Shown one piece after another: positions 1,380 through 48,130 of a stretch of DNA of 64,000 nt. Each line of letters starts with the position of its first letter. Position 1 is the stretch's first letter. A program made the position numbers and the translations under genes. The notes under the pieces were generated by a model, which saw only the letters and a program-made list of their open reading frames with translations, was not told the origin of the DNA and searched no databases. Source of the stretch: Paramoeba atlantica (taxonomy: Eukaryota > Protista > Discosea). The stretch lies in assembly GCA_977017575.1 (NCBI GenBank), contig CDRNVI010000047.1:62001-126000 (forward strand). The letters are read 5' to 3'.

Positions 1380-1387
1380 TCTTACTG

Positions 1388-4300
1388 ATGGGAATGTTCA
1401 CCCGCAGCCGGGCGAAAGAAAGGGGATTAGCTCCCGTTGTCCAACCGCTACCGCCCACACGCCGAAAGAAAAAGCCGGAGGAACAACCATCGGAAACCCG
1501 TGCCCCCCCACCACCGTCGTCGCCGCCGCCGCCACAACAACAACAGCCACCCCATTCAGCACCACGAAAGACACCCTCACAACGAACTTCTCCTCCGCCG
1601 CTGCCGCGATTGCCTTCTCTGCTGCGCACGCCGTCCGACACATCGCCGCGGGCGCAGATAACAACTCCGCCACTGCCTCGCCCACTCTCCCCCAATTTAG
1701 CTCACGAGGCATACGCGGCGGTAAATTCGTCACGATCGTCCTCAGTTCCTCGGCCGCACGAGCTGATCCACACAGCGACGCGGGCTCAGCCGTCCCGTCC
1801 ACCATTGCCGCGTCCACTCTCTCCCCCTCCCGCCCACAATTCTATCGCGCCAGCGAATCCGCATCCATCGCCCGAAAGCCAAAAAAGTAGCAGTTTGAAA
1901 ATTAAAATCACATCAACTCGAGATCTAATCAAAAGGCGGAGTGGAAAGATGCCAGAGCCAACCCAAAATCAGGCTCAAGCATTAATCAATCAAATGGCGG
2001 ACACTCAATTATCTCCTAATATCAAACAAAATCAAACATACGCAGAACAAGCGCGAAAGGTAATTTCGAAAACGCCTGCGAACCAAACTGAGGAGCACGA
2101 GGAGACACTCGATGAACTTATAGCCCGACCTCTGAACCCAACTGCAAAAATTATGACTGAATGCCCAGTTGAATATCGGCGCAGACGCAGAGAAGAGAGG
2201 CGAGAATGCCACCGACGTATAGCGCTTGCGATGAGCACACGCACGCCATCCTCAGCTGAAATGACAGACGGAGAAACAATAACGATACCGTCGTCTCTTT
2301 CGCACCACACTCGCACAGCACAACATGAGCTTTCAACGGTTCAAGCAGGAAACCAACAGGTCGAAGCGCATGCCATCCAAGAAAACGTACGCCCCTCTGC
2401 TGTTACACAATCGGCCTCCGAAAACATGCATCCTCCTCCTTTTATTCCACCAACTATCGATGAACTTAACCCTACAAACGATGGAGACTGTTCAGACAAC
2501 CCGGCGTCCTTTCATGACTGTGAATCACCTCCCTCCAGCAAAAGAACACAACACCAGACAACATCAGAACAGGATAACACCAATCAAGTCGTAACAGAAA
2601 TGCTGGAAACTATCAATCCACAACTGCATTTTCCGCAAACATTTGATGCTATTCTAGGAACGATGAAATCAGCCAAGACGGGAAATATCTGCATGGTTGC
2701 CTGGAGCTTTCAGAACCAAACTTCGCTAAATGTATCCGAAGGCACAGTCATTGGAGTACGATCCCGTGGAGGATGCAAGAAAAGCACGCTGCAGTACATT
2801 GGCATTGCTGGACACAAGCAGGGACACACGTTTCAAGGTTTCTTACCGCCACAAGCAAATGTTAGAGTCTACATGATACGATGGAAGATATCGCAAGACC
2901 GCAACACTTCCGAAAGTCCAATCGGATATCCAAACGAGCCCCATCAAGAGGCAAGCCTCGCATCGAATGAAAATTCACGCAATCAATGGACAGAGCAAGA
3001 CACCGATCATCTTCCCATTCCGACCTGCCGAACCATATCGGCAGAATTTGCGCCGAGGGTGGTTGCAGTGTATCGTGAAATAATCAGAATGTATCAACAA
3101 AGCGATTATCTTGAAAGAAACAGAATCTGGCATCGTGCATTGTCGGCTATGAAATTCTCTTTGGCTGAGGCGCGAAAGAGCTACGTCAGAAAACGGCGCC
3201 GCAAACCTATAATTACCGGACATGAGGCAATAGAAGACGAACAGTTAGCTGGCGACTTACGTGCTATAAAACGAGCCACTCGATTAGCCCTTGAGGGAAG
3301 CGTGACGAAGGCCGCCAAGATAATGGGCCAAAGCTTTAAGCGGAGCAAATTAACTGACAAAGAGACACTAGAAAAACTTTTAGCTTTACATCCCCAGCAT
3401 CCTTGCGCTTTCCCACTGCCAACTGATGCCCCTGTCATTGCAGGGATAAATGCCGAAGAGCTTAGAAGCGCCGGACGACGATTGGCGAGAGGAGCTAACC
3501 CAGGCCCGACTGGTACCACAGACATAGTAGTACGATTGCTACTAGATGACGAAATCTGCTGCAACAGTCTTGTCATCATGGTGGAAGACCTTGTCAACGG
3601 TTTCTTGAATGATGGAGTTATGAATCGACTAAATCGATCACGCCTCGTCGCAATTAGCAAATCAGAAACAGAAGTCAGACCGGTAGCAATGGGTGAAGTG
3701 ATCACAAAGCTTGCAGGAATAACTCTCCTACAGCGGTACGAAAACACGCTAGCGCCATTATTTGAACCCATACAGCATGGGGTACTCTCCCGTGCTGGGT
3801 GCGAAAAGATTGTGCACACACTGCATAACAAGTACGAAAAAGGACAGTGCATTCTTTCGCTCGATCTCAAGAACGCCTTTAACACCCCATCCAGAATTGA
3901 CATCGCAAAAGCCGTGTTTGCTTTTTCAGCGATGAGACCTTTCCAACGCCTCTTTCATGCTGAGTACTCCAGGGAATCTGAACTGTTGTATTACGGAACA
4001 GATGGGCAGCTTGCGGGAGTAGTACCGAGCACAGCTGGAGTGCGACAGGGCTCACCGTTGGCTACCCTTTACTTCTGTACTCTTATGCAACCAATCTTGG
4101 AGACAATGTCAATGGAATTCCCGGAAGTCAAAATTTTCGCGTACATTGACGATGTGAATCTGTGCTCTTCCAATAAAGCCCAACTCGAATCAGCATTTTT
4201 CCGTTTCAAAGAATTGATCGAGGATAAAAAGTTGGTTCTTTCCTCATCCAAATGTGTTTGGTTCGGGGGGGCATCTGGGGCACAGATACCTATAAAACTG

Positions 4301-9604: not shown

Positions 9605-10744
9605 ATGACTTCATCGTCGCGTTCTTTACGGAATTTACGGAGTGTGTCACCCGGTGCAGACGAGCTCGCGCCTACCGAGCCGCTGCCTGCACAGGCTTTG
9701 AATCAACTATGTACGGTTGTGAGAGAAAAGTTACTTGTTGCTCAAGGTGAAAGACCAAGTGTAAGAGTTCGTGCGGTATTTCGCAGGAAGGATGAACCGA
9801 ACGAGCCCACACAGATGCTGGAGGGGAAGATACGAAAGGAAGGATTGGAGTTGTGGGGGGTATGGTCCGACGAGCCAAATAAGGAGTATCCCTTTCCCTA
9901 CAGCGAGTTGAACTATTATCGAGTTGACATTCAGGACGAAATACGTATTACGGAATCCGAAAACTTGCGTACTTCTAATGATCCGACTGCGGTATTACCG
10001 CGAACACAGACTATGACATCTCGAGTTCCACGTCCGGTGACTACTACTGACCATGGAGAACAGGGATTGCCAGGAGACCTTTCTGCTAGTGAAACGACGC
10101 CCCCCATTCTTGATCCCAATGCACTGGACCCGTACGAACCAATCACTTACGAACCATGGCTTCTAACATTGGATGAGGGTGGCTTTCGTACCCGAGACTT
10201 AATGCGCGAGTTGCGTGACGCTCCCGAGTTTGGATTAAGGGTCAATCAGTTCTTCCAGGATCGTTCTTTTGTGAAACAACAGGAGCGGAATTTTACGGGG
10301 ATCTTTTGCAAGTGGATCGTATTGGCCCGTCAGACGCCCGGATGGAATCAGGGGGCTTTTATAGAAATGGGAAGAGCCATTGTTCAGATGCTTCGGGATG
10401 CATACTGGCGTGCACGTCGTGTTGATGTAGAGTTGGTCCACGAAAAATTACAGAAGGAGGTTCGGCCGAACGATAAATTTTACCATCACGTAAGCGATCA
10501 GCTTGCTGAACGACAGAAGCACTATGCTCGCGCGTACACGACCTACACGGCGCAATCTACGGCAGCTCGTTCATATCCTCAAGATTCGGGGTTTACCCGA
10601 CCACCTACAACATTTCGCAGAGGAGGGCTTTGCTTCGGATGTCGCTCGCCTGACCACATGTGGCGGAACTGCCCAAAACGCTTCCAACAGCCGGATTTTC
10701 GTTCAAGGGTGGCTGGCCCTGCGCACAGCGGCAAGAACTTCTGA
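9605..10744 (+). CDS. V1 Gag-like protein with C-terminal CCHC zinc knuckle
   Basis: CFGCRSPDHMWRNC; homologous to the V2 and V5 ORF1s. Confidence 0.88.
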   Translation: MTSSSRSLRNLRSVSPGADELAPTEPLPAQALNQLCTVVREKLLVAQGERPSVRVRAVFRRKDEPNEPTQMLEGKIRKEGLELWGVWSDEPNKEYPFPYSELNYYRVDIQDEIRITESENLRTSNDPTAVLPRTQTMTSRVPRPVTTTDHGEQGLPGDLSASETTPPILDPNALDPYEPITYEPWLLTLDEGGFRTRDLMRELRDAPEFGLRVNQFFQDRSFVKQQERNFTGIFCKWIVLARQTPGWNQGAFIEMGRAIVQMLRDAYWRARRVDVELVHEKLQKEVRPNDKFYHHVSDQLAERQKHYARAYTTYTAQSTAARSYPQDSGFTRPPTTFRRGGLCFGCRSPDHMWRNCPKRFQQPDFRSRVAGPAHSGKNF

Positions 10745-10767
10745 CAAAGTCCCACCCAAACGGCCAG
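10693..10767 (+). promoter_or_regulatory. Putative -1 ribosomal frameshift signal plus gag stop (recoding cassette)
   Basis: G GAT TTT, 7-nt spacer, GGGTGG/CCACCC and CTGGCC/GGCCAG helices; TGA at 10742. Conserved with covariation in V2, V4, V5 and V6. Confidence 0.75.
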
Positions 10768-13443
10768 TACAATCAGTTTCAAAAGAGGCAGTATAACAAT
10801 AATGCCAGTATCAAAGAGGAGGAAACTACAAACCGAAGATTCAAACAGCCAAGCTGGGAAGGTCCACAGTGTTGTAAACTTGAAAGGGAGAATATTACGC
10901 TCCGGGCACGTTTACGGGGGAACGCTAAGCGTTCAAACAACACCGGAAAGAATGGAATTATTGCGACTATTGATGGGGGTCACACATATGACCGACGAAA
11001 TACGGACTGCTATGGATGCCATGTCCGAAATGTGGAGCAATGCGACATGGCAGAGCCGCGCGAGGCTATGGGAGCGACTGAACGCATTTTGCAAGGGGAA
11101 GGGAATAACGCTCAACGCGATACACGCAGTAACGTTTCTGGCGAGTATGAACATCAGAGCGCAGGGAAAGATTACATACGCGCGAAGTCTCGCTACGTTG
11201 TTAAACCTCGCGGGCACGGAAACGAATCCGCTGAAATTCTATATAAAGTCGCTCCTAGCGGAGGGGGCGACCGAGCCAGTGCGGCAAATGAAACCGTTGA
11301 CCCCCGAGTTACTCCATCGACTTTGGCGACATCTCCCAAGGAGCGAAAAACATACCTTACTGCTCTCCTGGAAAGCAGCAAGTCGGTGGACCGAAACAGC
11401 AAGTTTGACAAAAGCGCAATTTCACGAGGTAACACCCCACCGAATAGTTATCTCGTGGGGCAGGAACACGAAAACGTCTCGATTAAATCCTTTCCGCCCT
11501 TCCATGTACACGGTGATAGAGGGACAGGGAACCAGGCAACTATACGAGTATATCAACCGATTGGGGCAGTGGGAACCCATGTCTCGGACCCCAGTATCCC
11601 AGGTCGACAGCAGAATTCGAGATATTCTAGGAAAGGGGTACGGAACGCACTCGGCGAAAAGGGGGGCAATAACACAACTGTTCGCCGAAGTGGTAAAAGG
11701 GACTCTCCGTCTAGACGAGGTACAACACCTAGCCAAACACCAGGCCCTGGAATCCCTGCTACGCTACAACGCAGATCCCGTGACGACGGCATTAGCATTG
11801 GGGACACAAAATGCGACAAAGAAATTAAGAATTATTTAGATCCCGAAGTGCTATTTTGCAAGTTTTTGGAAGATGTGCCACATGAAAAGGTAAGACACAC
11901 GATTACGAGATCGAGAAGAACTTCGAGAGTCGCACAAGGGGAGGAGCTAAAGCTTCCGTTACACGTGAAGAAAGGTATTCCTAACATAGAGTTAGGAGAT
12001 GTTAAGGAGATGATGAATAATCAGACTCGTCAGCGCTTCGAGGACACGTGGTCAAAATTGACAGCATTGCCGGAAAGTCCGAGTCCGGCACCAAAAAGCA
12101 AATCGTTTTTGAATACAAGAGATATTACAGAGCTGGTGGACGCAAGTTTTATTTCGAAGGTATCACGCGAACAAGAAGCGAAAAGTCCCACGATGGAATA
12201 TGTAGTACCGTTTACTGTAGTAGAACCGGCCGAAAATGGCGCCGAACGTCGTCGATTTATCGCCTGGACCCAATCTGATAATGTGCGTGTGAAAGAGACG
12301 TACAAACCCCATGTTCCGGTTAAGCATGCAGCCTTTTACCTCCATCGAGCTCGCCAGCAGTCGGCGGTGAAGAGGGATTTGGCATGCGGCTTCTTTCAAG
12401 TAAACATTCCTGCAGCGAGCCGAGCAAAGTTTCGCTTTACAAATCAGGACGGGGTCCTATATCAAATGAATGTAATGCCTATGGGGCATCGCTGTGCACC
12501 AGAACTGATGCACACGATCACATCGACCATTGCTGGGGACCCAAATTACTGCACTAGGAAATCCGCTTTTGTACATCCTGGTCTTGATGTCTATATAGAC
12601 GGAATTCGTTATGCCGCAGACGATCAAGTAACAAAGAAATATGCCGAGTTTATTGATGCGCGTGCGTTGAAGGTGAATGCCCTTTTTAAGGACGTTGGTA
12701 CCCCTCCGTTACAAAATTATACGTTTAATGGGGTGAATTATCATCATCGATTGGGGAAGGTCGCTCTTGGACCAAAAATTACGAAAAGGTTGCAATTGGA
12801 TGACTATATGAATGGAACTTATTCCGGATTGGAGGCAGGGGTTGGGAGGCTTATTTTTGGTTCGGCCGTGATGGGAATCGGGATCCCGCAGTACCACATG
12901 CAATTGAAAATAGTACGCCGACGGATAAATAATTTAAATCGAGACCCGACGTTAGGGGACAAACTCGTTCCACTTCCTTTTGGGGTCCGAAGAACCCTTT
13001 GTGAGTGGCGGGATGCTTTGGTCCACCGTTCCCCCGTTGAACCCGTGCGGCATCCAGATACCGTCCCTCATTGCCATATCCTGTGCACCGATGCGTCTTC
13101 TACAGGCTGGGGGGCAGTTCTATATTTGGACTACGGGCAAGTGTGTTGCACGGGAGCTTCATGGCCTGTTGGATTTGATTACGAGGTAAATCGAGCGGAA
13201 ACACGAGCGGTGAGATTAGCATTTCAAAAGTATGGACACTTTTTTAATAGGGACACATGTGTGGATTTGTTTGTGGACAATACTTCCTGCCTGGCTGCCA
13301 TAAATAGGAGAATGTCCCGTTCAGATGGGATCACAGCGGAATTGTGCGGGTTATTAAAATTCCTCCAACGTAACGGCATAGCAGTGCAGGCGCGTTATAT
13401 AACTTCAAAGGACAATCCAGCGGATCCGTATAGCAGATTATGA
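10693..13443 (+). CDS. V1 Pol: N-terminal extension overprinting YR, then RT and RNase H (DIRS/VIPER type)
   Basis: KRDLACGFFQ, MPMGHRCAP, VYIDGI; RNase H CTDASSTGWG, VDNTS, DNPADPYSR. The ORF track shows the frame open from 10660. Confidence 0.9.
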   Translation, partial: GFSFKGGWPCAQRQELLTKSHPNGQYNQFQKRQYNNNASIKEEETTNRRFKQPSWEGPQCCKLERENITLRARLRGNAKRSNNTGKNGIIATIDGGHTYDRRNTDCYGCHVRNVEQCDMAEPREAMGATERILQGEGNNAQRDTRSNVSGEYEHQSAGKDYIRAKSRYVVKPRGHGNESAEILYKVAPSGGGDRASAANETVDPRVTPSTLATSPKERKTYLTALLESSKSVDRNSKFDKSAISRGNTPPNSYLVGQEHENVSIKSFPPFHVHGDRGTGNQATIRVYQPIGAVGTHVSDPSIPGRQQNSRYSRKGVRNALGEKGGNNTTVRRSGKRDSPSRRGTTPSQTPGPGIPATLQRRSRDDGISIGDTKCDKEIKNYLDPEVLFCKFLEDVPHEKVRHTITRSRRTSRVAQGEELKLPLHVKKGIPNIELGDVKEMMNNQTRQRFEDTWSKLTALPESPSPAPKSKSFLNTRDITELVDASFISKVSREQEAKSPTMEYVVPFTVVEPAENGAERRRFIAWTQSDNVRVKETYKPHVPVKHAAFYLHRARQQSAVKRDLACGFFQVNIPAASRAKFRFTNQDGVLYQMNVMPMGHRCAPELMHTITSTIAGDPNYCTRKSAFVHPGLDVYIDGIRYAADDQVTKKYAEFIDARALKVNALFKDVGTPPLQNYTFNGVNYHHRLGKVALGPKITKRLQLDDYMNGTYSGLEAGVGRLIFGSAVMGIGIPQYHMQLKIVRRRINNLNRDPTLGDKLVPLPFGVRRTLCEWRDALVHRSPVEPVRHPDTVPHCHILCTDASSTGWGAVLYLDYGQVCCTGASWPVGFDYEVNRAETRAVRLAFQKYGHFFNRDTCVDLFVDNTSCLAAINRRMSRSDGITAELCGLLKFLQRNGIAVQARYITSKDNPADPYSRL
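10802..11839 (+). CDS. V1 tyrosine recombinase
   Basis: Catalytic R (WKAASRWTE), H-x-x-R (HSAKRGA), H (HLAKH) and Y (LLRY). Same frame as gag. Confidence 0.9.
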   Translation: MPVSKRRKLQTEDSNSQAGKVHSVVNLKGRILRSGHVYGGTLSVQTTPERMELLRLLMGVTHMTDEIRTAMDAMSEMWSNATWQSRARLWERLNAFCKGKGITLNAIHAVTFLASMNIRAQGKITYARSLATLLNLAGTETNPLKFYIKSLLAEGATEPVRQMKPLTPELLHRLWRHLPRSEKHTLLLSWKAASRWTETASLTKAQFHEVTPHRIVISWGRNTKTSRLNPFRPSMYTVIEGQGTRQLYEYINRLGQWEPMSRTPVSQVDSRIRDILGKGYGTHSAKRGAITQLFAEVVKGTLRLDEVQHLAKHQALESLLRYNADPVTTALALGTQNATKKLRII

Positions 13444-13564
13444 TTTTATATAGTCGGATATACAGTACTGTAAACACAGGGAATTAGATATCACACCAAA
13501 AAAAAAAAAAAAAAAAAACTTATTTATATAGATAGAATCATCAAAAAAAAAAAAAAAAAAAAAA

Positions 13565-13599
13565 TTTAACGATAAAGATACAGTTTCTGTACCTTGTTG
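13565..13599 (+). other. Spliced-leader-like 35-mer TTTAACGATAAAGATACAGTTTCTGTACCTTGTTG
   Basis: Shares the ACAGTTTCTGTAC core and terminal TTG with kinetoplastid/diplonemid SL exons. Identical copy at 44941; partial copy at 46479-46490 (-). Confidence 0.75.
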
Positions 13600-13645: not shown

Positions 13646-16600
13646 ATGTCTGAAGACGATCTTCTCAAAGCCTCACCTCCGCCGATGGACGACGATTCAT
13701 TTTTACAAGAGGAAGCAGTACACAATAGAGGATCCTGGGACCAGTTTGCTGGAAACGCACATCTCATTAAGCAACGGAGTACGTACAACGAATTGCTCTA
13801 CACGACCCCTATTCCTGCGAACATTCCGGAAGAATGGAACATGAACGCCGCCTTGATCTCAACTGAGAACCAGACACGTGATACGGGACAGGTAGATAGT
13901 AGCGATGAGGAAACAAACCACTCACGAGTCATCAGATTACATCATGGACACCAAAAAACGCAATCTGATAGCAACACTATCACTAAAAAGTTTACTCGAT
14001 GCCAACCATCTTCCACACCCCCAAGCGTCAAAGGGAATCGGGGAATCGTAAAGTCTCATCGAAAAGCGCGCGAACCAGCTACACCTCGAAAAGGGGAAGC
14101 GACGGAACATAACCCCGAAAACAACTCTCCACGCCAAATAGTACAAGGAACTTCCCTTGAAATCCCACCTTCGACGAGCGAAGCAGTTCTCACGTTTCCA
14201 TCTTCCCAAAACCGTCCGACACAAAGGGAGTGCCCCGCAGAAAACTGTATTTGGAAAACTCGTGCCCATGGAGGTCAATGGCAGTCGTACTACAACCACG
14301 TTGCTTACCGACACGGAAATAACATACCCAATGACTGGTGGACAAAGGAAGGACGATTTCTCTGCGACGCATGCGGTCGTCATTACGATATTAGCAAGAA
14401 AACTTCTCATTTGAATCATTGTAAAATGCAATTTACACCACCCTCCTCGCAGCCGCCCTCACAACCGCAGCAGCCTTCACAGCTGTCAGAGTCCGGGGAA
14501 GCCATGTACGATATACAAGGTACGCATAGTCTACCGTCCCTAGAGGAAGTTTGCACGACTCAAATAAGCACGTGCAAGGATGTCCCACACCGATGTCGAT
14601 ATCTGTGGACCAGAATTTTTACCGCAGCCCTCTCCACCGCGGTAAACGAAAACTCACTGAGAGCCTGGACCCTTCTTGCCTTGCTTCCGAAATGCGTCCT
14701 ACCAGCTCCGTACCGAGGAGGCCGCAAAGCTCACAAGTCCTATACCTCCTACATATCAAAGCGAATGGAACTTTGGATACAAGGCCAATATACCACCCTA
14801 TGGGCCCAAGCAAATTCGGAGCATGACAGGAAGCGCTCAAAAGTGCCGAATAATGAGATTGAGGGTGAAGAAGACAAGGCTGCAATACGGGCTGAAATTC
14901 TGGTTCGCCAAGGAGAATTTTCCCGAGGCATGGCTGCCCTTACTGCAGCTCCACTTGCACCATACAGCGAGGAAACCCTGCTAAAGCTGCAGGAAAAACA
15001 CCCTAGCCCCCATGGTAATCCCATCTCGTGCCCCCTACCTCCCCTGGAAGAAGAAGCTTTAAAACTGGACGAATCCGAGGTAAGAAAAGCAGTAGATACC
15101 TTCCGTCGCGGATCCTCTGCTGGGACTATGGGGCTCCGGCCTGAACACCTCCAAACAGCGCTTCAAGAGCACGTCGACCAGAATATGAATCCTCTTACGA
15201 CGCTCACTTCCTTCGTAAACCATCTCCTAGCTGGCAAAGCCCCAGACGAAGTGCAACCTTTTTTTGCAGGGGCACGGCTATGCGCACTCGAAAAAGGGGA
15301 AGATGACGTGCGGCCTATCGCTGCGGGGGAAACCCTTAGACGTCTGGTGAGCAAGGCAGTGTGCCTTTCGATAAAAGAAAAAGCAGGATCCTTCTTTGGA
15401 CGTCGTCAATACGGGGTCGCAGCGTCTGCTGGGGCGGAAAGAGTGATACACCTTTGTCGCCGTCTAATGAGAAATAATGAAGAAAATGAGAACATAACGT
15501 TCTGTAAGGTGGATCTTCGGAACGCCTTTAATAACGTGAGCCGACCCGTCTTCATCTTTCTCACGCGAAAGCATTTCCCTGAACTATCCCCATGGGTAGA
15601 ATGGTGTTATGCCAATCACAGCTGTCTCACATTCGGCAATGATTTTATCCCCTCGGCAGAAGGAGTGCAACAAGGAGAACCTCTGGGCCCACTCCTCTTC
15701 TCCTTGGTGTTAGCAGAGGTAACAGAAGAAATTGCATCAAATTCTAACCTACGAACACAATTATGGTATTTAGATGACGGTGTGCTTGTAGGTGAGCCCA
15801 AAGAAGTCCGTAAAGCCCTAGACGTCCTCGACGAGATAGGACCGAAGTGGGGACTCTTCCTGAATCTCTCCAAGTGCGAGATCATTACCCCCCCCAGCAT
15901 CAGCTCATACCTCCGTTTTCTTTCCTGACATCCCCAGTGATAAAATACGGTACGACGGGAACTTCGACATTCTTGGAAGCCCAATAGGCTCTGCGGAACA
16001 CTGTGCGGAGTTTCTCATGACACATGCGATTGAACCAGCCCGCGAAACATTAGAAGCTACTGCTGTGTTAGAAGATCCCCAAATAGCTCTCGCACTAATA
16101 CGGCAATGTTCGGGGTTTTGTCAGATGGTGTACGCACTGCGTACCACTCCTCCCCAAGCCCTTGGAGAATTATGCCAAAAACTTGACTCTCATCTAGTCC
16201 AGGCCGTGGAGCACGCATTTTCTCCCTTAGGCGTCGCCGCTCGCGACCAAATACAACGACCAAAACGCCACGGCGGGTTCGGACTTCGCTCATCAATTCT
16301 CCACCAGTCAGCAGCCTACGTTTCTTCCGTCGCGCACGCCGCTAGCTTGGACAACTGGGACCCCACAGTCTACGCCCAGTTACGCCAGTTTCTGGGAAGT
16401 TCGCAAGGCAAGACTGGGATGTACGCAAGTGCATATTAAGTTGATTTCTTTATAAGTATACTTATAAAGAAATATACGAGAGGAAATCTAGGAGACTATA
16501 TCACGCAATTACGCGACAGCCTACCAAAGGCCGCATGGCTAGGTTCTATCAATTCGTAGACCTACACAGCAAAAAAAAAAAAAAAAAAAACGGTATAACA

Positions 16601-31508: not shown

Positions 31509-32738
31509 ATGACACAACTCGAACTTCACTCTACCCGAAATTTACGGTCATCGCGCAGTTCGTCTCCTGCAGTGCAACGGCCCGAGCCTACCGAGCCGTT
31601 GTCGCAGCAGGAGCTGAGTTTGGTGTGCACTGTTGCCCGAGAAAAACTGTTGAGTAGGGTGGCGGTCAATGTTAGGGCCAAATTTCGACGCAAGGACTCT
31701 TCTTCTGAGGCAATGCAAGTTGTGCAAGGTAAGATTCGAAAAGAAGGGATTGAATTATGGGGTGTCTGGGATAATGAACCCTCAAAAGAGTATCCATTTC
31801 CGCACGCCGACTTGTACTATTACGGCATTTCGATCATAGATGATCCTCCGGCGACTACGGGGCTAGAACAAGGGTCGACCGCCAATGGATTACGTACTAG
31901 TCAGAATTTCCCGGATGGTGGGGGGACAAACGAGGCTATTGTTAATGCTGATACTGTGGAAACTGGAATTCCTTTCGGACCGAGTGCCAATTTGGACCCT
32001 AACGGCCTGGATCCTTACGAGCCGATTACGTTCACCCCATGGATTAACGCCTTTGATGACGGGGGATTTCGCGTACGGGATTTGATGCGAGAACTGCGAG
32101 AAGCACCAGAATTTGGACTTCGCGTGAACAATAGTTGCGCAACTGCGCGATTATCTACCCCGAGCATCGTGGCTGGGTTCACTGCAATCGTAAAGAATCC
32201 GTAAAGATTACGAATTGGTTACGAATTTTCATTAACCGTGAACCAGTTTTTCACCGACCGGACTTTTCTGAAGCAACAAGAACGATTTTTTGAAAATGTT
32301 TTTTGCAAGTGGATTCTTTTTGCGCGGATGACTCAAGGTTGGGATCAGGGAGTTTACTTGGAAATGGGAAAAGCAATCATTCAGACGATGCGCGATGCAT
32401 ATTGGCGAGCCCGGCGCATTGACGTGGATCTCGTGCATCAAAAATTGCAAAAAGACGTCCGTCCGAATGATAAGTTCTACCATCTTGTCAGTGAGCAATT
32501 AGTTGATCGCCAGAAGCAGTATGCCCGCCAAGTGGGATTTTCCGGATCAGGGGTCTTCCACTCAAAGGCAAGTTTTCAAGGAAATGCGCGCCAGAATTTT
32601 GTGCCTCAACAGCGAGCTCCTTTATTGTGTTATGGTTGTCGTTCCCCTGACCACATGTGGAGAAATTGTCCTAAACGGTTTCAGCAGGGTTTTCGTTCGA
32701 GGGTGGCTGGCCCTGCACAAGGCAGCAAGAACTTCTGA
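31509..32738 (+). pseudogene. V2 gag interrupted by a 107-bp insertion (32130-32236)
   Basis: CYGCRSPDHMWRNC. TSD CGTGAAC; removal restores PEFGLRVNQFF. Confidence 0.88.
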
Positions 32739-32804
32739 AACGTTCCCACCCGAACGGCCAGTACTACAATAAATACCAACCGAAACCACAAACCTTTTAC
32801 GCAA

Positions 32805-36545: not shown

Positions 36546-37574
36546 ATGTCTGGAATCGTCCAAGCGGTTACTAGGGCAATTTCACGATCTAGAGCAAACA
36601 GCCCTGAGCCTCAAGCTCCGGAGCCCCAGGTTTCCCGACATAGCCGACGAGGCGGTACCCTCAACCCTGACCAGGTTGAAGCCCTCCTTGGAAACGATGT
36701 ACGTTTGCCGATGACGGATGATGCGAAATATGAATTTGCTCATAAGATGCGATTGCTTCTCTCTCGAGGTCATAAGGTTTGGATTCAGGCAGTATGGGGC
36801 CACCAGGAAGAGACCGAGCAATATAGAGTAATCGGCCAAGTGTACTTGAAAAATCGCAATGACCCTGACCACTCAGAATTAAAGGCGCGTTGGGATGATG
36901 AACAAGATATGGAGTACAGCTTCCCGTTCCCAGATATTGACTATTACTCATTGGCGATTGCTAAAGTACAAGCTCGAATGCCAGGCGGTGAGCGAGTTGA
37001 GCATCTTCCTTCTGTAGACCGTTTGACCATCTCTGATCCCAAGAACTTCTCTCCCATTGAACCAAAAACATGGGGTCCATGGATAGAATCCCCAGATGAG
37101 TTTAAGCCACGGGAACTGGTACGAGAGCTCCGCGATACGAAAGAATTCGGCGTACGGTTCAATCCTCCGCTTGTTCGGGAACGCTTATTCGAAATGCTCG
37201 TTCAGTGGATTTATGCGGCGCGCAAGTTGGCAGAATGGACAGACGAAAACTTCTACAACATAGCTAAGATCATTATAGAGGAGCTAAGAAACCATTATTG
37301 GGCCGCGGCCGGCGCTCCAGTTGAGAAAGTACAGCAGCGACTTCACCAGGTAAGGAACCCTGACGACACCTATGGACGTATTATGCTAGAGGAAACTTCA
37401 AAGCAGTCTCGTCGGGTACGTGCGACCCAGCCTCCGCTGTGCTTCAACTGTCGCATGCCTGGGCACTTGCGGGCCAATTGTCCACGTTTAAAGGATTTTC
37501 ACCGGGGGGTGGCGAGTGGCGGTACGAAGACACCTGTGAGCTACACTCGTGCCGAAAGACGAACGATCCACTAG
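36546..37574 (+). CDS. V4 Gag-like protein
   Basis: CFNCRMPGHLRANC; paralogue of V6 gag. Start placed at the first ATG. Confidence 0.85.
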   Translation: MSGIVQAVTRAISRSRANSPEPQAPEPQVSRHSRRGGTLNPDQVEALLGNDVRLPMTDDAKYEFAHKMRLLLSRGHKVWIQAVWGHQEETEQYRVIGQVYLKNRNDPDHSELKARWDDEQDMEYSFPFPDIDYYSLAIAKVQARMPGGERVEHLPSVDRLTISDPKNFSPIEPKTWGPWIESPDEFKPRELVRELRDTKEFGVRFNPPLVRERLFEMLVQWIYAARKLAEWTDENFYNIAKIIIEELRNHYWAAAGAPVEKVQQRLHQVRNPDDTYGRIMLEETSKQSRRVRATQPPLCFNCRMPGHLRANCPRLKDFHRGVASGGTKTPVSYTRAERRTIH

Positions 37575-37685
37575 GAAACGTTCCCCACCCCGAAAACAAC
37601 TACTCGTGCTCCTGCCTTATACAAAAGGCGGGAGAACTTACCAGGCTATTTTACACGTTCATCTCCAAGTTATGTATGGAACGGT

Positions 37686-40346: not shown

Positions 40347-40424
40347 TTGATGCGAAATTTTCGTTCCTACGTCGATTCTCCGGTATTCTATATTTGGAAC
40401 ACTGGCGATTAAAGGACGGGCGTT

Positions 40425-41513
40425 TCATAACGTCTTGGCGCTGTGCGCGCTGCCAGCCGCCCTCTGGCGAAAATCCGGTGGTGATGATCTTTTGTACGGA
40501 CAATCCTTCAAGAAATGAACAGGAGATCGGCAATTGTAACACACTGGGCGCCCCACATTGGAAGAAGCATAACTCGGATACATTTGTCTCGGCTGACCAA
40601 AAGAACGATAACTTCGATTCACATAATTTGATCCGGAGTAGCGCGCACGAAATTTCTCTCGATCGGATAACTGATCCGACACGTGTTGATAAAATTTGTC
40701 GTGTGATCTGTCCTCTTTATCCAACTTCTGGTGGACTGCCTCTACATCTACCTTGCACGCTCGCCAATATGAGTCTCGAAGACTCTGAACGATTGCTTTA
40801 CCCAACTCCAAGAAAGGACCTTCAGACCATCCTGGGGTATCCCGCGCCAACATAATCCATTTCCCTAGCAAATTGTCGAAGTTTCGCTCTTGCTGTTTCT
40901 GAAATGAACGATCCTGAAAGAATTGATTGAGTCGCAAACCATATTCCGGTGCCTCCTTCAGTTCCCGAATCAAATCACGAATGCGAAATCCCTCATCATT
41001 ACGGGCATCGATCCACGCTGGCCAAGTAATAGGTTCATAAGGGTCTAACTTTAACGAATTCATTGATGCGAATGATTGCAGATTTGGAGGCAGGGGCCGT
41101 CCGCCGTCCAATGGCTGCGTCTCCGGAAGATTATTCGAGGACTGTGGTTCGGCTTCTTCCAGGTCAATACGAAAGTAATTCAGATCATTGTGAGGAAAGG
41201 GGTACTCACGCGTGGGATCGTCCTCCCAGACCGCCCACATTTCCATGCCTTCACGTCGAATCTTGCCATGCGAAGTACGTTTTGCCGAAGTCGACGCGTC
41301 TTTTCGTTGCCATACCGCTTTAATGTGCAGAACCGGTGCCACATCCTTCGCCAGCAAAAGCTTTTCACACACTCTTGATTTCATTATGCTCATTTCCGAG
41401 CTTCCCATCGGATTCTCTGGCACGATCGATGGACTACGCGTTTCGCGTGGTGATAGAGTCTCTCGCGGCGACAACGCACACGCGAATCGCCGCGATTGAA
41501 GTCGTGAAGTCAC
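40425..41513 (-). CDS. V5 Gag-like protein, N-terminus continuous with the 177-bp satellite
   Basis: CYNCRSPVHFLKDC; homologous to V1/V2 gag. The start codon is uncertain. Confidence 0.85.
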   Translation of the reverse strand: MTSRLQSRRFACALSPRETLSPRETRSPSIVPENPMGSSEMSIMKSRVCEKLLLAKDVAPVLHIKAVWQRKDASTSAKRTSHGKIRREGMEMWAVWEDDPTREYPFPHNDLNYFRIDLEEAEPQSSNNLPETQPLDGGRPLPPNLQSFASMNSLKLDPYEPITWPAWIDARNDEGFRIRDLIRELKEAPEYGLRLNQFFQDRSFQKQQERNFDNLLGKWIMLARDTPGWSEGPFLELGKAIVQSLRDSYWRACKVDVEAVHQKLDKEDRSHDKFYQHVSDQLSDREKFRARYSGSNYVNRSYRSFGQPRQMYPSYASSNVGRPVCYNCRSPVHFLKDCPYKRSSPPDFRQRAAGSAHSAKTL

Positions 41514-46489: not shown

Positions 46490-47304
46490 ATTCGTCTCAT
46501 GTAGTCCGCTAACTCGGCAGTTCCGGGGCCCGTCACAATCGCGTACATATACGGTCGAAAGGGGTTCATTCTCGTTGACTTCGTTGCTCTTCCCCAGTAA
46601 ATCACCACCTCTTCGGGAGTAACCTTTAATATCTGTTCTGTCGAGAGTTCCGCCGTTTCCGTCCAACGAGCTGCCGTTTTCCAGCACGAAAGAGCCGTCA
46701 TGCTCTCGGATGTTGTTAGACTTCTTCTCAACCGTCTTAGAAGGACGGGAGTAATTGCAAGCATTTGTCTCTGTGGTTCTAGTCCGCCTTGCGCTTGCAA
46801 CGCCTTTCCGTAGATCTTCAATGGGGTTGCTTCGGCTCCCATGAGCGTAATAAGAGTCTGCAGATTCCTTGCGTAGGCCAGTCGTGTCGACGTCGCCAGT
46901 TTCAATGAGTCTACGAACCTGACCGCACTGAGCGCGTTTTGAGATAGGTGACGTTGTGCACAAAAGTCTTGCATCCGGAGCCACAGCCTCTCCCTCGTTC
47001 CCCACGTACTTGTTGCCCACATGGGCTCGATTGCTTTCCGAACGATCTGACCGTGCGGATCCTTTGGGTTGAGTCCGAGTATATCGCATAAAAGGTTTGA
47101 TCTCGTTTGTTCCCTTGCCAAAGGCGCTGCCGTTCCGAACACGTGTTTTCCCCTCCGAATTTGAAGTCTCGGTAAATCCGTTCTTTCCACTGCACTTGCA
47201 CTTTCCATTCGCAAGAATAAAGATGAATTCGGAGAAGAGCCTGGTAAGTTCACCCGCCGTATCCTCAACGGTCGGGCACGAGCATTTGTCGGGGTGGGGC
47301 ACAA
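46490..47304 (-). pseudogene. V6 tyrosine recombinase, N-terminal part
   Basis: WKTAARWTE; continues after the insertions to HSIKRGA and LLRY. Confidence 0.85.
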
Positions 47305-47307
47305 ATC

Positions 47308-48130
47308 CTATTGTGTGCGTCTTACGCCCGTCTGGGCGCCGCTCGCCACCCCCCCACGAAAAACCGGTTGTGGTGCCCCGCTTTGCAAACGAGGACATTG
47401 AGCGCGAACGTGACCAGTTTGGCGACAATTGTAGCATACACGCGCTCCTTTCACAACCCGTGGTAGGCGATTCACACGCAGCTGTTCCTCTGTCATGATT
47501 TGTCCGTAACGATCCTGAGGATCATCATCCTTGTGAAGGCGCTGCTGAACACGTTCTACAGGAGCTCCCGCTGCTGCCCAATAATGATTTCGAAGCTCTT
47601 CGATGAGCATTTCCGCGATACAAATGAATTGCTCATCTTTCCATCCTTCCATCACTCTAGCTGCATAAATCCACTTTACCAATATGGCAAACAAGCGCTC
47701 ACGATGTGCCGGAGGATTGAAGCGAACTCCCAGCTCCGGAGTTTCACGCAGCTCACGAACAAGCTCTCGCGGCTTAAATTCATCCAGAGAGTCGATCCAA
47801 GCCGCCCACGTCAAAGGAACAAATGAAGAAAACTTAGATGGGTCACGAACTTGCATTCCTTCCAGCGCAGCTAGCTGCTCATCACGCGGCTGTCCACCTG
47901 GCATCGCCTTGTAAACTTTAACGATAGAAAGTGCGAAATAGTCAATCAGCGGATGGGGGAACTCATACTCATTGTCGGGATCATCCTCCCACAGGGCCCA
48001 AATATCAAACTCATCACTGTTTTTCGCCTTCTTACGGTATACTTTACCCACAACAGTTTGATTCACATCTTCACCGCGCTCGGCCCATGTTGCCTGTATT
48101 TGCACCTTAAATCCCTTCTCCAGCAAAGTC
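47308..48130 (-). pseudogene. V6 gag, main part
   Basis: CYNCRQTGHVRAQC; paralogue of V4 gag. Confidence 0.85.

What the first reader, a model, noticed from the sequence alone, without database searches (positions are those of the whole stretch)
10693..10767. Conserved -1 frameshift signal with covarying pseudoknot-topology helices at the gag end of all five coding YR retrotransposons
Seen: V1 (10693), V2 (32687), V4 (37493), V5 (40476, -) and V6 (47365, -) each have a heptamer in gag phase, respectively G_GAU_UUU, G_GGU_UUU, G_GAU_UUU, G_GAU_UUU and G_GUU_UUU. A 6-7 nt spacer follows, then S1a-S2a...S1b...S2b. The helices are GGGUGG/CCACCC + CUGGCC/GGCCAG (V1, V2), GGGGUGG/CCACCCC + CGAGU/ACUCG (V4), GGGGUGG/CCACCCC + CGAGC/GCUCG (V6, compensatory change) and AGGGCGG/CCGUCCU + CUGGC/GCCAG (V5). 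The -1 frame reads GFS in all five and leads to RT. Established: slippery site + 5-9 nt spacer + pseudoknot is the canonical -1 PRF layout. Inference: Pol is made as a Gag-Pol fusion. I know of no such description for VIPER-type elements but could not search. With loop 1 = 0 nt and loop 3 about 4 nt, the two helices may be alternatives (a switch) rather than coexisting.
Basis: partly seen in the sequence, partly recalled or inferred. Interest (0 to 1): 0.93.

Follow-up and report, generated by a model that had tools for sequence, protein, structure and literature searches.

The report
Gag-pol frameshift signal in VIPER-like retrotransposons
Jumping genes of the VIPER type in this kinetoplastid-like protist carry a ribosome-slipping site followed by a conserved folded RNA at the end of their coat gene. 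This most likely explains how their reverse transcriptase is made, although a second gene lies on top of its reading frame.

Summary
All five sites have a heptamer in gag phase, a 6-7 nt spacer and the helices S1 and S2 in crossing order, with gag stopping 49-79 nt further on.

About 30 lineages were checked, some 250 copies genome-wide plus relatives in seven other public samples. Both helices keep pairing through compensatory changes. One S2 partner (CAAGC/GCUUG) was predicted before it was seen. Two further covarying hairpins lie inside S1; in many lineages the second holds the gag stop codon in or at its loop.

Distant relatives replace the U-rich heptamer by other classic slippery sites (A_AAA_AAU, G_GGA_AAC), and one decayed T. 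cruzi VIPER copy has A_AAA_AAC. Slipperiness is conserved, not sequence.

The -1 frame runs without any stop across the whole tyrosine-recombinase gene in 14 intact lineages. Synonymous shuffles predict 6-16 stops. Its peptide there is barely conserved.

I read this as -1 programmed frameshifting that makes Gag-linker-RT/RNase H (confidence 0.8). Whether S1 and S2 coexist as a pseudoknot or alternate is open. No RNA or protein data exist.

The recombinase is in frame behind a single gag stop, so readthrough may also occur.

I found no published description. The scan had noted the same signal elsewhere in this genome (s1-369782, s1-389391).

The parts
9605..10744 (+). V1 gag ORF (379 aa), with a CCHC zinc knuckle close to its C-terminus; stop UGA at 10742-10744
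   Evidence: ORF list; translation. Pfam zf-CCHC hits were on the homologous gags of V4 and V5.
10693..10699 (+). V1 slippery heptamer G_GAU_UUU in gag phase
   Evidence: GGAUUUU is an established -1 PRF site.
10700..10706 (+). V1 spacer, 7 nt
   Evidence: Spacers are 5-7 nt in all lineages.
10707..10712 (+). V1 S1 5' arm GGGUGG, pairs with 10752-10757
   Evidence: S1 is in the MFE fold. Covariation U-A/C-G, G-C/A-U/G-U and the outer pair.
10713..10718 (+). V1 S2 5' arm CUGGCC, pairs with 10762-10767 (crosses S1)
   Evidence: Compensatory changes across lineages.
10719..10731 (+). V1 hairpin H1 (CUGC / GCGG, 5-nt loop), directly 3' of S2a
   Evidence: Read off. H1 shows changes on both sides in 5 of 6 pairs in alignment A6 and 2 in clade B.
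10737..10750 (+). V1 hairpin H2 (ACUU / AAGU) with the gag stop UGA 10742-10744 in its loop
   Evidence: Read off; in the MFE fold. Stems differ completely between lineages. In clade C, 4 of 9 pairs change on both sides.
10752..10757 (+). V1 S1 3' arm CCACCC
10762..10767 (+). V1 S2 3' arm GGCCAG
10693..13443 (+). V1 -1 frame ORF from the heptamer to the pol stop (916 codons). The first roughly 380 codons overprint the recombinase gene and are poorly conserved. The conserved RT/RNase H follows.
   Evidence: RVT_1 weak hit. Homologues.
10745..11839 (+). V1 ORF in gag frame directly behind the gag stop (364 codons): tyrosine recombinase by motifs (HSAKRGAIT ... LLRY)
   Evidence: Pfam finds nothing.
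32687..32761 (+). V2 signal: G_GGU_UUU 32687-93, S1a 32701-06, S2a 32707-12, stop UGA 32736-38, S1b 32746-51, S2b 32756-61
   Evidence: L030 is the same lineage
37493..37606 (+). V4 signal: G_GAU_UUU 37493-99, S1a 37506-12, S2a 37513-17, stop UAG 37572-74 in H2, S1b 37585-91, S2b 37602-06
40402..40476 (-). V5 signal: G_GAU_UUU 40476-70, S1a 40463-57, S2a 40456-52, stop UGA 40427-25 in the H2 loop, S1b 40419-13, S2b 40406-02
47279..47365 (-). V6 signal: G_GUU_UUU 47365-59, S1a 47352-46, S2a CGAGC 47345-41, stop UAG 47310-08 in the H2 loop, S1b 47297-91, S2b GCUCG 47283-79

Best explanation
**What it is.** This is a programmed -1 ribosomal frameshift signal at the gag/pol junction of VIPER-type tyrosine-recombinase retrotransposons.

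**How it most likely works.**
1. Ribosomes translating gag reach G_NNU_UUY, or another slippery heptamer in relatives. The leading edge of the ribosome then meets helix S1, 5-7 nt downstream.
2. S1 closes a compact fold. Its 5' arm is followed at once by S2a and then by hairpins H1 and H2. H2 usually carries the gag stop. S1b comes next, and a few nucleotides later S2b, which pairs back to S2a in pseudoknot order.
3. A minority of ribosomes slip one base back on the Phe codon and the preceding codon, and continue in the -1 frame.
4. That frame is kept free of stops across the whole overlapping recombinase gene as a poorly conserved linker of about 380 residues. It then encodes RT/RNase H, giving a Gag-linker-Pol fusion.
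5. The remaining ribosomes stop 22-85 nt later and make Gag.

**Shown:** the sequence layout, the phase, the covariation of four helices, the replacement of the heptamer by other slippery heptamers, and the stop-free -1 frame.

**Inferred:** that slipping occurs, its efficiency, and that S1 and S2 form at the same time.
For: 1. **Phase and overlap.** The heptamer is in gag phase in all lineages. The -1 frame opens only 9-51 nt upstream of it in most.
2. **Known slippery sites.** GGAUUUU (PEMV2, L-BC and totiviruses) and related heptamers are documented -1 sites.
3. **Slipperiness is what is conserved.** Relatives from other samples have G_GAU_UUC, A_AAA_AAU and G_GGA_AAC at the same place. A T. 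cruzi VIPER copy has A_AAA_AAC in gag phase 30 nt before the gag stop.
4. **Spacing.** The spacer is 5-7 nt.
5. **Covariation.**
   - Clade B: 93.8% of cells paired, against about 39% when slid.
   - Clade C: 97.9% paired, with 5 pairs changed on both sides.
   - Cross-clade alignment A6: 94.1% paired against 31-46% slid. 11 of 18 pairs change on both sides, and 0 of 500 shuffles reach this. S2 was not part of the model that made this alignment, yet is 98.5% paired.
6. **S2 across lineages.** Six distinct arm pairs are 30/30 paired, matched by 6 of 720 permutations. The partner GCUUG for CAAGC was predicted and then found.
7. **Strand specificity.** G-U pairs occur in S1, S2 and H1. They would be C-A mismatches on the other strand, so the constraint is on the sense RNA.
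8. **Stop-free -1 frame.** Zero stops lie in the -1 frame over 355-444 recombinase codons in 14 intact lineages. Synonymous shuffles predict 6-16, and at most 1 of 500-1000 shuffles reaches zero. The +1 frame has 10-37 stops.
9. **No alternative start.** The -1 peptide over that stretch is barely conserved, and there is no conserved AUG in the -1 frame.
10. **Recent activity.** Many copies are identical or nearly so, so RT must be made.
Against: - There is no RNA-seq, ribosome-profiling or protein evidence. No RNA run holds the element.
- Nested folding energies of clades A and B are no better than shuffles (z near 0). Only clade C stands out (z about -2.8).
- P-site re-pairing is imperfect for G_GAU_UUU, G_GUU_UUU, G_AUU_UUU and G_AAU_UUU.
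- Loop 1 is 0-1 nt and loop 3 only 4 nt in clade A. This is at the steric limit for a coexisting pseudoknot.
- Three relatives (L093, L094, L097) show S1 but no clean S2.
- The one T. cruzi copy examined shows no comparable structure (48 of 300 shuffles as good).
- Clade B and some clade A lineages have AUGA at the gag stop, which would also allow termination-reinitiation.
Confidence: 0.8

Rival explanations
1. Frameshifting occurs, but S1 and S2 are alternative conformers rather than a pseudoknot. On this reading either S1 or S2 closes the H1/H2 multiloop, and the balance between them sets or regulates the frameshift rate.
For: - Nested MFE folds pick S1 in some lineages and S2, sometimes extended, in others. 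Their energies are therefore close.
- L1 is 0 nt in most lineages, and L3 is 4 nt in clade A.
Against: - Both helices are kept by compensatory changes in the same lineages. Either model explains that.
- L3 is 5-10 nt, and L1 is 1 nt in several lineages (L095, L101, one clade B lineage). That geometry is ordinary for an H-type pseudoknot with an insertion at the helix junction.
- S2a alone starts 12-14 nt after the heptamer, too far to stimulate slipping by itself.
Confidence: 0.3
2. Pol is not made by frameshifting. It would come instead from termination-reinitiation at the gag stop (NUGA overlap), from internal initiation, or from a separate spliced-leader mRNA. The conserved RNA fold would then serve another purpose, such as packaging, dimerisation or reverse-transcription priming.
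For: - Clade B and several clade A lineages read AUGA at the gag stop, and others read CUGA, GUGA or UUGA.
- Kinetoplastids can trans-splice internal sites.
Against: - Clade C stops with UAG preceded by CU or AU, which gives no start codon.
- The -1 frame is open from the heptamer to the stop in every lineage, and has no conserved AUG.
- Internal initiation near RT would not require 355-444 stop-free codons over the recombinase gene.
- Conservation of slipperiness with unrelated heptamers is unexplained by this rival.
Confidence: 0.1
3. The main job of the fold is to promote readthrough of the single gag stop codon. This would give a Gag-recombinase fusion, as in the MuLV-type stop-plus-pseudoknot signal.
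For: - The recombinase ORF is in frame with gag behind one stop in every lineage, and in the T. cruzi VIPER consensus: ORF1 169-1509, YR from 1510.
- The recombinase has no conserved AUG.
- The stop sits in or at the H2 loop.
Against: - The stop lies inside the structure. With a ribosome on it, S1a, S2a and H1 are already unwound and S1b is in the mRNA channel, so the fold cannot act as a downstream stimulator.
- The MuLV layout (stop, 8 nt, pseudoknot) is not met.
- This rival does not explain the heptamer or the open -1 frame.
- Readthrough may still occur in addition to frameshifting.
Confidence: 0.1
4. The helices are a by-product of double coding and common descent, with no RNA structure.
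For: - The region is read in two frames, so strong nucleotide conservation is expected.
- S1 and S2 are invariant within clades A and C.
Against: - Changes on both sides that keep pairing occur in S1, S2, H1 and H2.
- Unrelated helix sequences occupy the same layout in other samples: GGGGGA/UCCCCC with ACCGG/UCGGU, CGGGGG/CCCCCG with CUGGCG/CGCCAG, and GUUGG/CCAAC with CAUUGAC/GUCAGUG.
- S1b is shifted by 2 nt relative to the codon alignment between clades A and B.
Confidence: 0.03

Closest known systems
Retroviral and viral -1 PRF signals (slippery heptamer, spacer, H-type pseudoknot), e.g. MMTV or SRV-1 gag-pro, BWYV, PEMV2 (G_GAU_UUU), yeast L-A and L-BC gag-pol
   Same: - The heptamer is in 0-frame phase and the spacer is 5-7 nt.
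- A G-rich first helix is followed by a second helix in crossing order.
- gag stops shortly after, and pol is in the -1 frame without its own start.
- The heptamers GGAUUUU, GGGUUUU, AAAAAAC and GGGAAAC are all documented sites.
   Different: - S2a follows S1a with 0-1 nt.
- The position where classical pseudoknots have 0-1 nt (between S2a and S1b) carries 9-70 nt, usually two covarying hairpins.
- The gag stop lies inside the fold.
- The frameshift product first reads about 380 codons of an overprinted, poorly conserved frame before reaching RT.
- The host is a euglenozoan and the element is a YR retrotransposon.
VIPER of Trypanosoma cruzi (YR retrotransposon; Lorenzi et al. 2006 as cited in PMC5146736 and PMC6681497)
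   Same: - The ORF plan is identical: gag with a CCHC box, the recombinase starting at the codon after the gag stop in the same frame, and RT/RNase H in the -1 frame overlapping the gag end and the whole recombinase. The consensus coordinates are 169-1509, 1510-2517 and 1386-4214.
- The pol profile hits T. cruzi, T. theileri and Angomonas deanei proteins at E values of 1e-112 to 1e-131.
   Different: - Published accounts describe overlapping ORFs and alternative starts, not a recoding signal.
- The one T. cruzi copy I could read has A_AAA_AAC but no S1/S2 layout above chance.
- Pol identity to the window's elements is only about 30%.
DIRS1-like elements with long YR/pol ORF overlaps (PMC3266345)
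   Same: Both have a long overlap between the recombinase and pol reading frames, and a gag-YR-RT/RH gene set.
   Different: - DIRS1 elements carry a methyltransferase domain and ITR/ICR repeats.
- No frameshift signal is described for them.
[quoted passage not shown]
SARS-CoV-type three-stem frameshift pseudoknot
   Same: Both are multi-helix pseudoknots placed 5-7 nt after the slip site, with an extra hairpin besides S1 and S2.
   Different: - There the third stem lies between S1b and S2b. Here both extra hairpins lie between S2a and S1b.
- There is no sequence or Rfam similarity.

Membership tests
Canonical eukaryotic -1 PRF signal | Slippery heptamer in 0-frame phase that lets the A-site (and P-site) tRNA re-pair in -1 | tested here: met
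   - A-site UUU or UUC shifts to UUU in all U-type sites.
- Full X_XXY_YYZ in G_GGU_UUU, G_GGU_UUC, A_AAA_AAU, G_GGA_AAC and A_AAA_AAC.
- Partial P-site pairing in G_GAU_UUU, which is nevertheless a proven site.
-.
Canonical eukaryotic -1 PRF signal | Spacer of about 5-9 nt to a stable downstream structure | tested here: met
   Spacer 5-7 nt in 20 of 24 lineages found by blind search.
Canonical eukaryotic -1 PRF signal | Downstream structure under selection | tested here: met
   Covariation counts with slid and shuffled controls; permutation test for S2.
Canonical eukaryotic -1 PRF signal | Downstream ORF in the -1 frame, overlapping the upstream ORF and lacking its own conserved start | tested here: met
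Canonical eukaryotic -1 PRF signal | A transframe protein is actually produced | not testable with these tools
   No RNA or protein data.
H-type RNA pseudoknot | Two helices in the order S1a-S2a-S1b-S2b | tested here: met
H-type RNA pseudoknot | Both helices form in the same molecule, with loops long enough to span the grooves | tested here: inconclusive
   L1 is 0-1 nt, L3 is 4-10 nt, and the middle segment is 9-70 nt. This is feasible on paper for most lineages and tight in clade A. No pseudoknot-aware folding or probing was available.
VIPER-type YR retrotransposon | Gag-like ORF with CX2CX4HX4C, then YR, then RT/RNase H, with the ORF phases of the T. cruzi consensus | tested here: met
   Weak Pfam zf-CCHC hits plus the motif. 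Frames, compared with the coordinates in PMC5146736.
VIPER-type YR retrotransposon | Recognisable tyrosine recombinase domain | tested here: inconclusive
   Pfam finds nothing. The HS-x-K-R/H-G box and LLRY are conserved in alignments. No structure comparison was done.
VIPER-type YR retrotransposon | RT/RNase H homologous to trypanosomatid VIPER | tested here: met
   The profile search hits T. theileri, A. deanei TcC31.12 and T. cruzi TcBrA4_0050800 at E values of 1e-112 to 1e-131.
VIPER-type YR retrotransposon | Split direct terminal repeats (A1 ... B1 A2 B2) | not tested
Rfam frameshift elements and ribozymes | Match to a curated covariance model | tested here: not met
   No hit at gathering score in the window. 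Nothing relevant at E up to 5 on the V1 and V4 junctions.
MuLV-type stop-codon readthrough signal | Stop codon followed after about 8 nt by the whole pseudoknot | tested here: not met
   The stop lies between S2a and S1b, so half of each helix is upstream of it.

The most novel reading that the evidence does not exclude
One junction may drive two recoding events. The first is -1 frameshifting at the heptamer, giving Gag-linker-RT/RNase H. The second is readthrough of the single in-frame gag stop, which many lineages display in or at the H2 loop, giving Gag-recombinase. All three proteins of VIPER-type elements would then come from one spliced-leader-capped genomic RNA without internal initiation. 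On this reading the plan is ancestral to the family across Euglenozoa, T. cruzi VIPER included.
Probability: 0.3. Interest if true: 0.8.

Novelty: new variant of a known kind. Interest (0 to 1): 0.62.

Why it matters
- **It answers an open point about VIPER-type elements.** It gives a concrete, testable account of how the RT/RNase H is translated although its frame overlaps the gag end and the entire recombinase gene. Published work lists overlapping ORFs and 'alternative start sites' only.
- **It may be a first.** As far as my searches reach, this would be the first programmed frameshift signal described for tyrosine-recombinase retrotransposons, and for a cellular element of kinetoplastid-like protists. 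These organisms control expression mostly after transcription.
- **The structural data are unusually rich.** About 30 natural lineages with compensatory changes in four helices form a ready-made mutational series. The pseudoknot is unusual in carrying its extra hairpins at the helix junction.
- **It bears on annotation.** The Gag-Pol fusion is currently split into separate ORFs with arbitrary starts.
- **The T. cruzi lead is easy to test.** The canonical A_AAA_AAC in a T. cruzi VIPER copy suggests the mechanism reaches a well-studied human parasite's genome, where it could be tested with existing tools.

Tried and rejected
- **RNA evidence.** The look-up of sequencing runs found four runs of unrecorded kind holding the stretch, none on record as RNA, and one doubtful 'RNA?' run with none of the words. 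Read laying put nothing from that run on V1. Expression is therefore untested.
- **Pfam on the post-stop ORFs and on the overprinted -1 peptide.** No family was found. Recombinase identity rests on motifs.
- **Rfam.** No family matched. I considered an HDV-like ribozyme topology and rejected it. There the second hairpin follows P1b; here both hairpins precede S1b.
- **Thermodynamic z-scores.** They are not significant for clades A and B, so I do not use stability as evidence there.
- **MAFFT alignment of clades A and B (A1).** It puts S1b out of register by 2 nt and was not used for pair counts. A covariance-model alignment (A6) was used instead. The wider model alignment (A5) misplaces S2b in several clade C rows and contains one spurious hit, so it was not counted either.
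- **Uninformative loci.** The Diplonema papillatum homologue (L100) sits behind a (CTA)n repeat without gag. L096 has no gag upstream.
- **T. cruzi copy L102.** A heptamer was found, but the S1/S2 layout is not above chance. The copy is decayed.
Later lineages were read only from pattern-match lines cut at 80 letters.
  - The first protein search drew its words from the unconserved linker and found only 3 proteins.
- **Not attempted.** No protein structure or complex prediction was run, because none bears on the RNA claim.
Full report
**1. Observation**

At 10693-10767 the + strand reads, in order:
- the heptamer GGAUUUU
- a 7-nt spacer
- GGGUGG (S1a)
- CUGGCC (S2a)
- 33 nt that contain the gag stop UGA (10742-44)
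- CCACCC (S1b)
- 4 nt
- GGCCAG (S2b)

A script confirmed three things for all five. The heptamer is in gag phase. Gag stops 49-79 nt later. The -1 frame opens 12-240 nt upstream and reads GFS.

Only V1 (2748 nt) and V5 (1875 nt) keep a long -1 ORF in this window. V2, V4 and V6 break after about 900 nt, so 'all five coding' is overstated.

Gag ends with a CCHC knuckle.

**2. What the elements are**

*The host.* The genome is 45.7 Mb in 248 contigs. A kinetoplastid/diplonemid-type spliced-leader sequence lies at 13565-13599.

*The recombinase.* The ORF in gag frame directly behind the gag stop carries the recombinase boxes HS-x-K-R-G-A-x-T and LLRY in seven divergent lineages. Pfam does not recognise it.

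*The polymerase.*
- The -1 ORF carries RT (weak RVT_1 hit). It has 1290 homologues in a 1.84-billion-protein library.
- One homologue is a Papus ankaliazontas transcript and another a Diplonema papillatum protein.
- A profile of the conserved half hits Trypanosoma theileri, Angomonas deanei 'TcC31.12' and T. cruzi proteins at E values of 1e-112 to 1e-131.

*The ORF plan.* The published T. cruzi VIPER consensus has ORF1 at 169-1509, YR at 1510-2517 and RT/RH at 1386-4214 (PMC5146736). So YR is in frame right after the gag stop, and RT/RH is in the -1 frame over the gag end and all of YR. The window's elements have exactly this plan, so they are VIPER-type by architecture and by pol homology.

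**3. More lineages**

DNA searches of the window's own genome brought in 89 loci. Pattern searches then printed further junctions.

| Clade | Members | S1 | S2 |
|---|---|---|---|
| A | V1, V2 and at least 7 more | GGGUGG / CCACCC | CUGGCC / GGCCAG |
| B | V5 and at least 6 more | (C/A)GG(G/A)CGG / CCG(U/C)CC(G/U) | CUGGC / GCCAG |
| C | V4, V6 and at least 8 more | GGGGUGG / CCACCCC | varies (section 4) |

The clade C pattern alone matches 113 places. The clade A/B pattern matches 194 places, of which roughly a third are an unrelated satellite.

Relatives were fetched from other public samples through their pol proteins:
- L090, L091 and L095, from a metagenome assembly (ERZ24900291) that may be of the same organism or a close relative
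- L092, L093, L094, L097, L098 and L101, from six other samples

**4. RNA structure**

*Counts within clades.*
- Clade B (alignment A3): 93.8% of cells pair, against 36-43% with slid partners. Two S1 pairs change on both sides: G-C/A-U with a G-U intermediate, and the outer pair C-G/A-U.
- Clade C (alignment A2): 97.9% pair, against 40-54% slid. Five pairs change on both sides.

*Counts across clades.* A covariance model was built from clade B with S1, H1 and H2 but without S2. It aligned 13 sequences of all three clades (alignment A6). On A6:
- 94.1% of cells pair, against 31-46% slid.
- 11 of 18 pairs change on both sides, and 0 of 500 shuffles reach this.
- S2, which the model did not know, is 98.5% paired, with 3 of 5 pairs changed on both sides.

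*S2 arm pairs within clade C.*
- CGAGU / ACUCG
- CGAGC / GCUCG
- UGGGC / GCUCG (two G-U pairs)
- CGGGC / GUUCG (two G-U pairs; a single, probably decayed copy)
- CAAGC / GCUUG

For the last pair I wrote down the expected partner before fetching it. Six distinct S2 types are 30/30 paired, and 6 of 720 permutations do as well.

- H1 lies just after S2a. Its stems include CUGC/GCAG, GCGCC/GGCGC, CGCCC/GGGCG and GCACC/GGUGC.
- H2 lies one nucleotide before S1b. Its stems are unrelated between lineages: ACUU/AAGU, GUUU/AAAC, GCUU/AAGC, CGUU/AACG, GGUAUU/AAUACC, AAUCC/GGAUU, GCGCUUC/GAAGUGC, CACAA/UUGUG, GGCC/GGCC and GACCA/UGGUC.
- The gag stop lies in or at the H2 loop in many lineages, but in its stem or outside a clear H2 in some.

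*Independent helix sequences in other samples, in the same order.*
- L092: GGGGGA/UCCCCC with ACCGG/UCGGU
- L095: CGGGGG/CCCCCG with CUGGCG/CGCCAG
- L098: GGGGGG(A)/(U)CCCCCC with CGGGC/GCUCG
- L101: GUUGG/CCAAC with CAUUGAC/GUCAGUG

*Blind search.* A blind constrained search finds the layout in 20 of 24 lineages, each with at most 2 of 300 shuffles as good. L093 has S1 and a bulged S2. L094 and L097 have S1 only.

*Other points.*
- G-U pairs on the sense strand show that the constraint is on RNA, not on duplex DNA.
- S1b is displaced by 2 nt relative to the codon alignment between clades A and B. Coding constraint would not produce that.
- Nested folding energy is not exceptional in clades A and B (z near 0). 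It is in clade C (z -2.7 to -2.9).
- Rfam has nothing like it.

**5. Evidence that ribosomes change frame here**

(a) *Known sites.* GGAUUUU is a proven -1 site in PEMV2, and is the accepted site in L-BC and many totiviruses.

(b) *The heptamer varies but stays slippery.* The forms seen are:
- G_GAU_UUU, G_GGU_UUU, G_GUU_UUU
- G_GUU_UUC, G_GGU_UUC
- G_AUU_UUU, G_AAU_UUU
- G_GAU_UUC
- A_AAA_AAU (L094) and G_GGA_AAC (L101)

A decayed T. cruzi VIPER copy has A_AAA_AAC in gag phase, 30 nt before the gag stop. The encoded peptide changes (DF, GF, VF, IF, NF, KN, GN), while slipperiness does not.

(c) *The overlap is narrow.* The overlap of the two frames narrows to -9..+49 nt around the heptamer.

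(d) *The -1 frame is kept open.*
- In seven intact lineages of this genome the -1 frame has no stop over the 362-392 recombinase codons. Synonymous-codon shuffles give 10-13 stops, and 0 of 1000 reach zero. The +1 frame has 23-31 stops, as expected.
- The same holds in seven relatives from other samples: 0 stops against 6-16 expected, with -1 ORFs of 949-1034 codons starting at the heptamer.

(e) *The -1 peptide behaves like a linker.* It is almost unconserved over that stretch and has no conserved AUG. Conservation resumes just after the recombinase stop. A frame kept open but not conserved is what a translated linker looks like.

**6. Mechanism**

The best reading is classical -1 PRF. The A-site tRNA-Phe slips from UUU or UUC to UUU. 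The conserved G at heptamer position 1 can pair with anticodon position 36 of the P-site tRNA, because all observed P-site codons of the U-type heptamers start with G or A. The 5-7 nt spacer puts S1 at the mRNA entrance (inference).

The product is Gag-linker-RT/RNase H. For V1 the junction peptide should read ...QQPDF|SFKGGW....

S1 and S2 can be drawn as an H-type pseudoknot. Its helix junction, normally 0-1 nt, carries the 9-70 nt insertion with H1 and H2. L1 (0-1 nt) would cross the deep groove of the 5-7 bp S2. L3 (4-10 nt) would cross the shallow groove of S1. This is tight in clade A and ordinary elsewhere.

Nested MFE folds flip between S1 and S2 as the closing helix. A switch therefore cannot be excluded.

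**7. Rivals**

- **Termination-reinitiation.** It is conceivable where the stop reads AUGA (clade B and some of clade A). It fails for the UAG stops of clade C. It also does not explain the heptamers or the open frame upstream of the stop.
- **A separate trans-spliced RT mRNA or internal initiation.** Neither would need the 1.1-kb stop-free frame.
- **Readthrough as the fold's main role.** The geometry does not fit, because half of each helix lies upstream of the stop. Even so, the recombinase is in frame behind one stop in every lineage and lacks a conserved start. Readthrough in addition to frameshifting is therefore a live possibility.

**8. Literature**

- Searches for VIPER or DIRS together with frameshifting terms found only mutational frameshifts, 'overlapping ORFs' and 'alternative start sites'.
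- The large recoding review does not mention these elements.
- Subscription-only papers, notably Lorenzi et al. 2006, could not be read.
- Earlier notes of this scan (s1-369782 with a follow-up, and s1-389391) report the same kind of signal on other pieces of this genome. My analysis agrees with them. It adds the cross-sample relatives, the heptamer replacement, the stop-free-frame test and the T. cruzi link.

**9. Verdict**

This is a real, strongly conserved recoding signal. It is a new variant of a known kind. Direct evidence of expression is missing.

Noticed in passing
window 10742-10805; 32736-; 37572-; 40427-; 47310- (and all related loci): The recombinase ORF is in the same frame as gag, separated by one stop codon only (UGA or UAG), and has no conserved AUG. 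The T. cruzi VIPER consensus has the same arrangement (ORF1 ends at 1509, YR starts at 1510). This suggests stop-codon readthrough or another coupling.
   Followed up: partly
window 10693-11839 and L001, L009, L014, L061, L069, L041, L046: The pol frame overprints the whole recombinase gene. It is stop-free (0 stops against 10-13 expected) but almost unconserved as protein, like a disordered linker.
   Followed up: yes
G000:C7:239207-239602, C26:507264-520748, C32:43550-45234, C21:730166-730812 and others: A 27-nt tandem satellite, TTTTTCA-NN-GGGTGGCCAGCTGGCCAC, resembles the tail of the heptamer plus S1a and S2 of clade A (GGGTGGCTGGCC ... GGCCAG). It contains the perfect palindrome GTGGCCAGCTGGCCAC. 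Its relation to the elements, for example as a recombinase target, is unknown.
   Followed up: no
window 13498-13599: Two A-runs are followed by a spliced-leader-like sequence (...AACGATAAAGATACAGTTTCTGTACCTTGTTG), just after the V1 pol stop and before the next ORF with a strong RVT_1 hit (13646-15928).
   Followed up: no
G000:C18:36282-44781 (L009-L013): Five copies of one clade A lineage follow each other at a spacing of 2084-2087 bp. This is a tandem array much shorter than a full element.
   Followed up: no
about 65 places, e.g. G000:C1:137061-137152, C29:73987-74117: The most abundant clade C lineage has heptamer GGATTTT and S2 UGGGC/GCUCG with two G-U pairs. It has no CCHC knuckle within 48 nt upstream. 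It may be a non-autonomous or gag-variant family.
   Followed up: partly
L088:1684-1746 (-): A clade A junction fragment is cut off right after CTGG of S2a, next to a clade B element. This is a truncated or nested insertion.
   Followed up: no
window 40427-40430 and the clade B loci; L009, L091: The gag stop reads AUGA, so an AUG in the pol frame overlaps the stop. This is the layout of termination-reinitiation sites, but it is not conserved in clades A and C.
   Followed up: partly
L102:3073-3200 (T. cruzi GCA_015033625.1, WNWZ01000155.1): A decayed VIPER copy has a CCHC knuckle and A_AAA_AAC in gag phase at 3159-3165. The gag stop is at 3193-3195, and the recombinase frame opens at 3196.
   Followed up: partly
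L100:1541-2500 (Diplonema papillatum JAPJBO010000103.1): The annotated pol homologue (KAJ9466091.1) is preceded by a long (CTA)n repeat that is open in the pol frame. No gag lies upstream.
   Followed up: no
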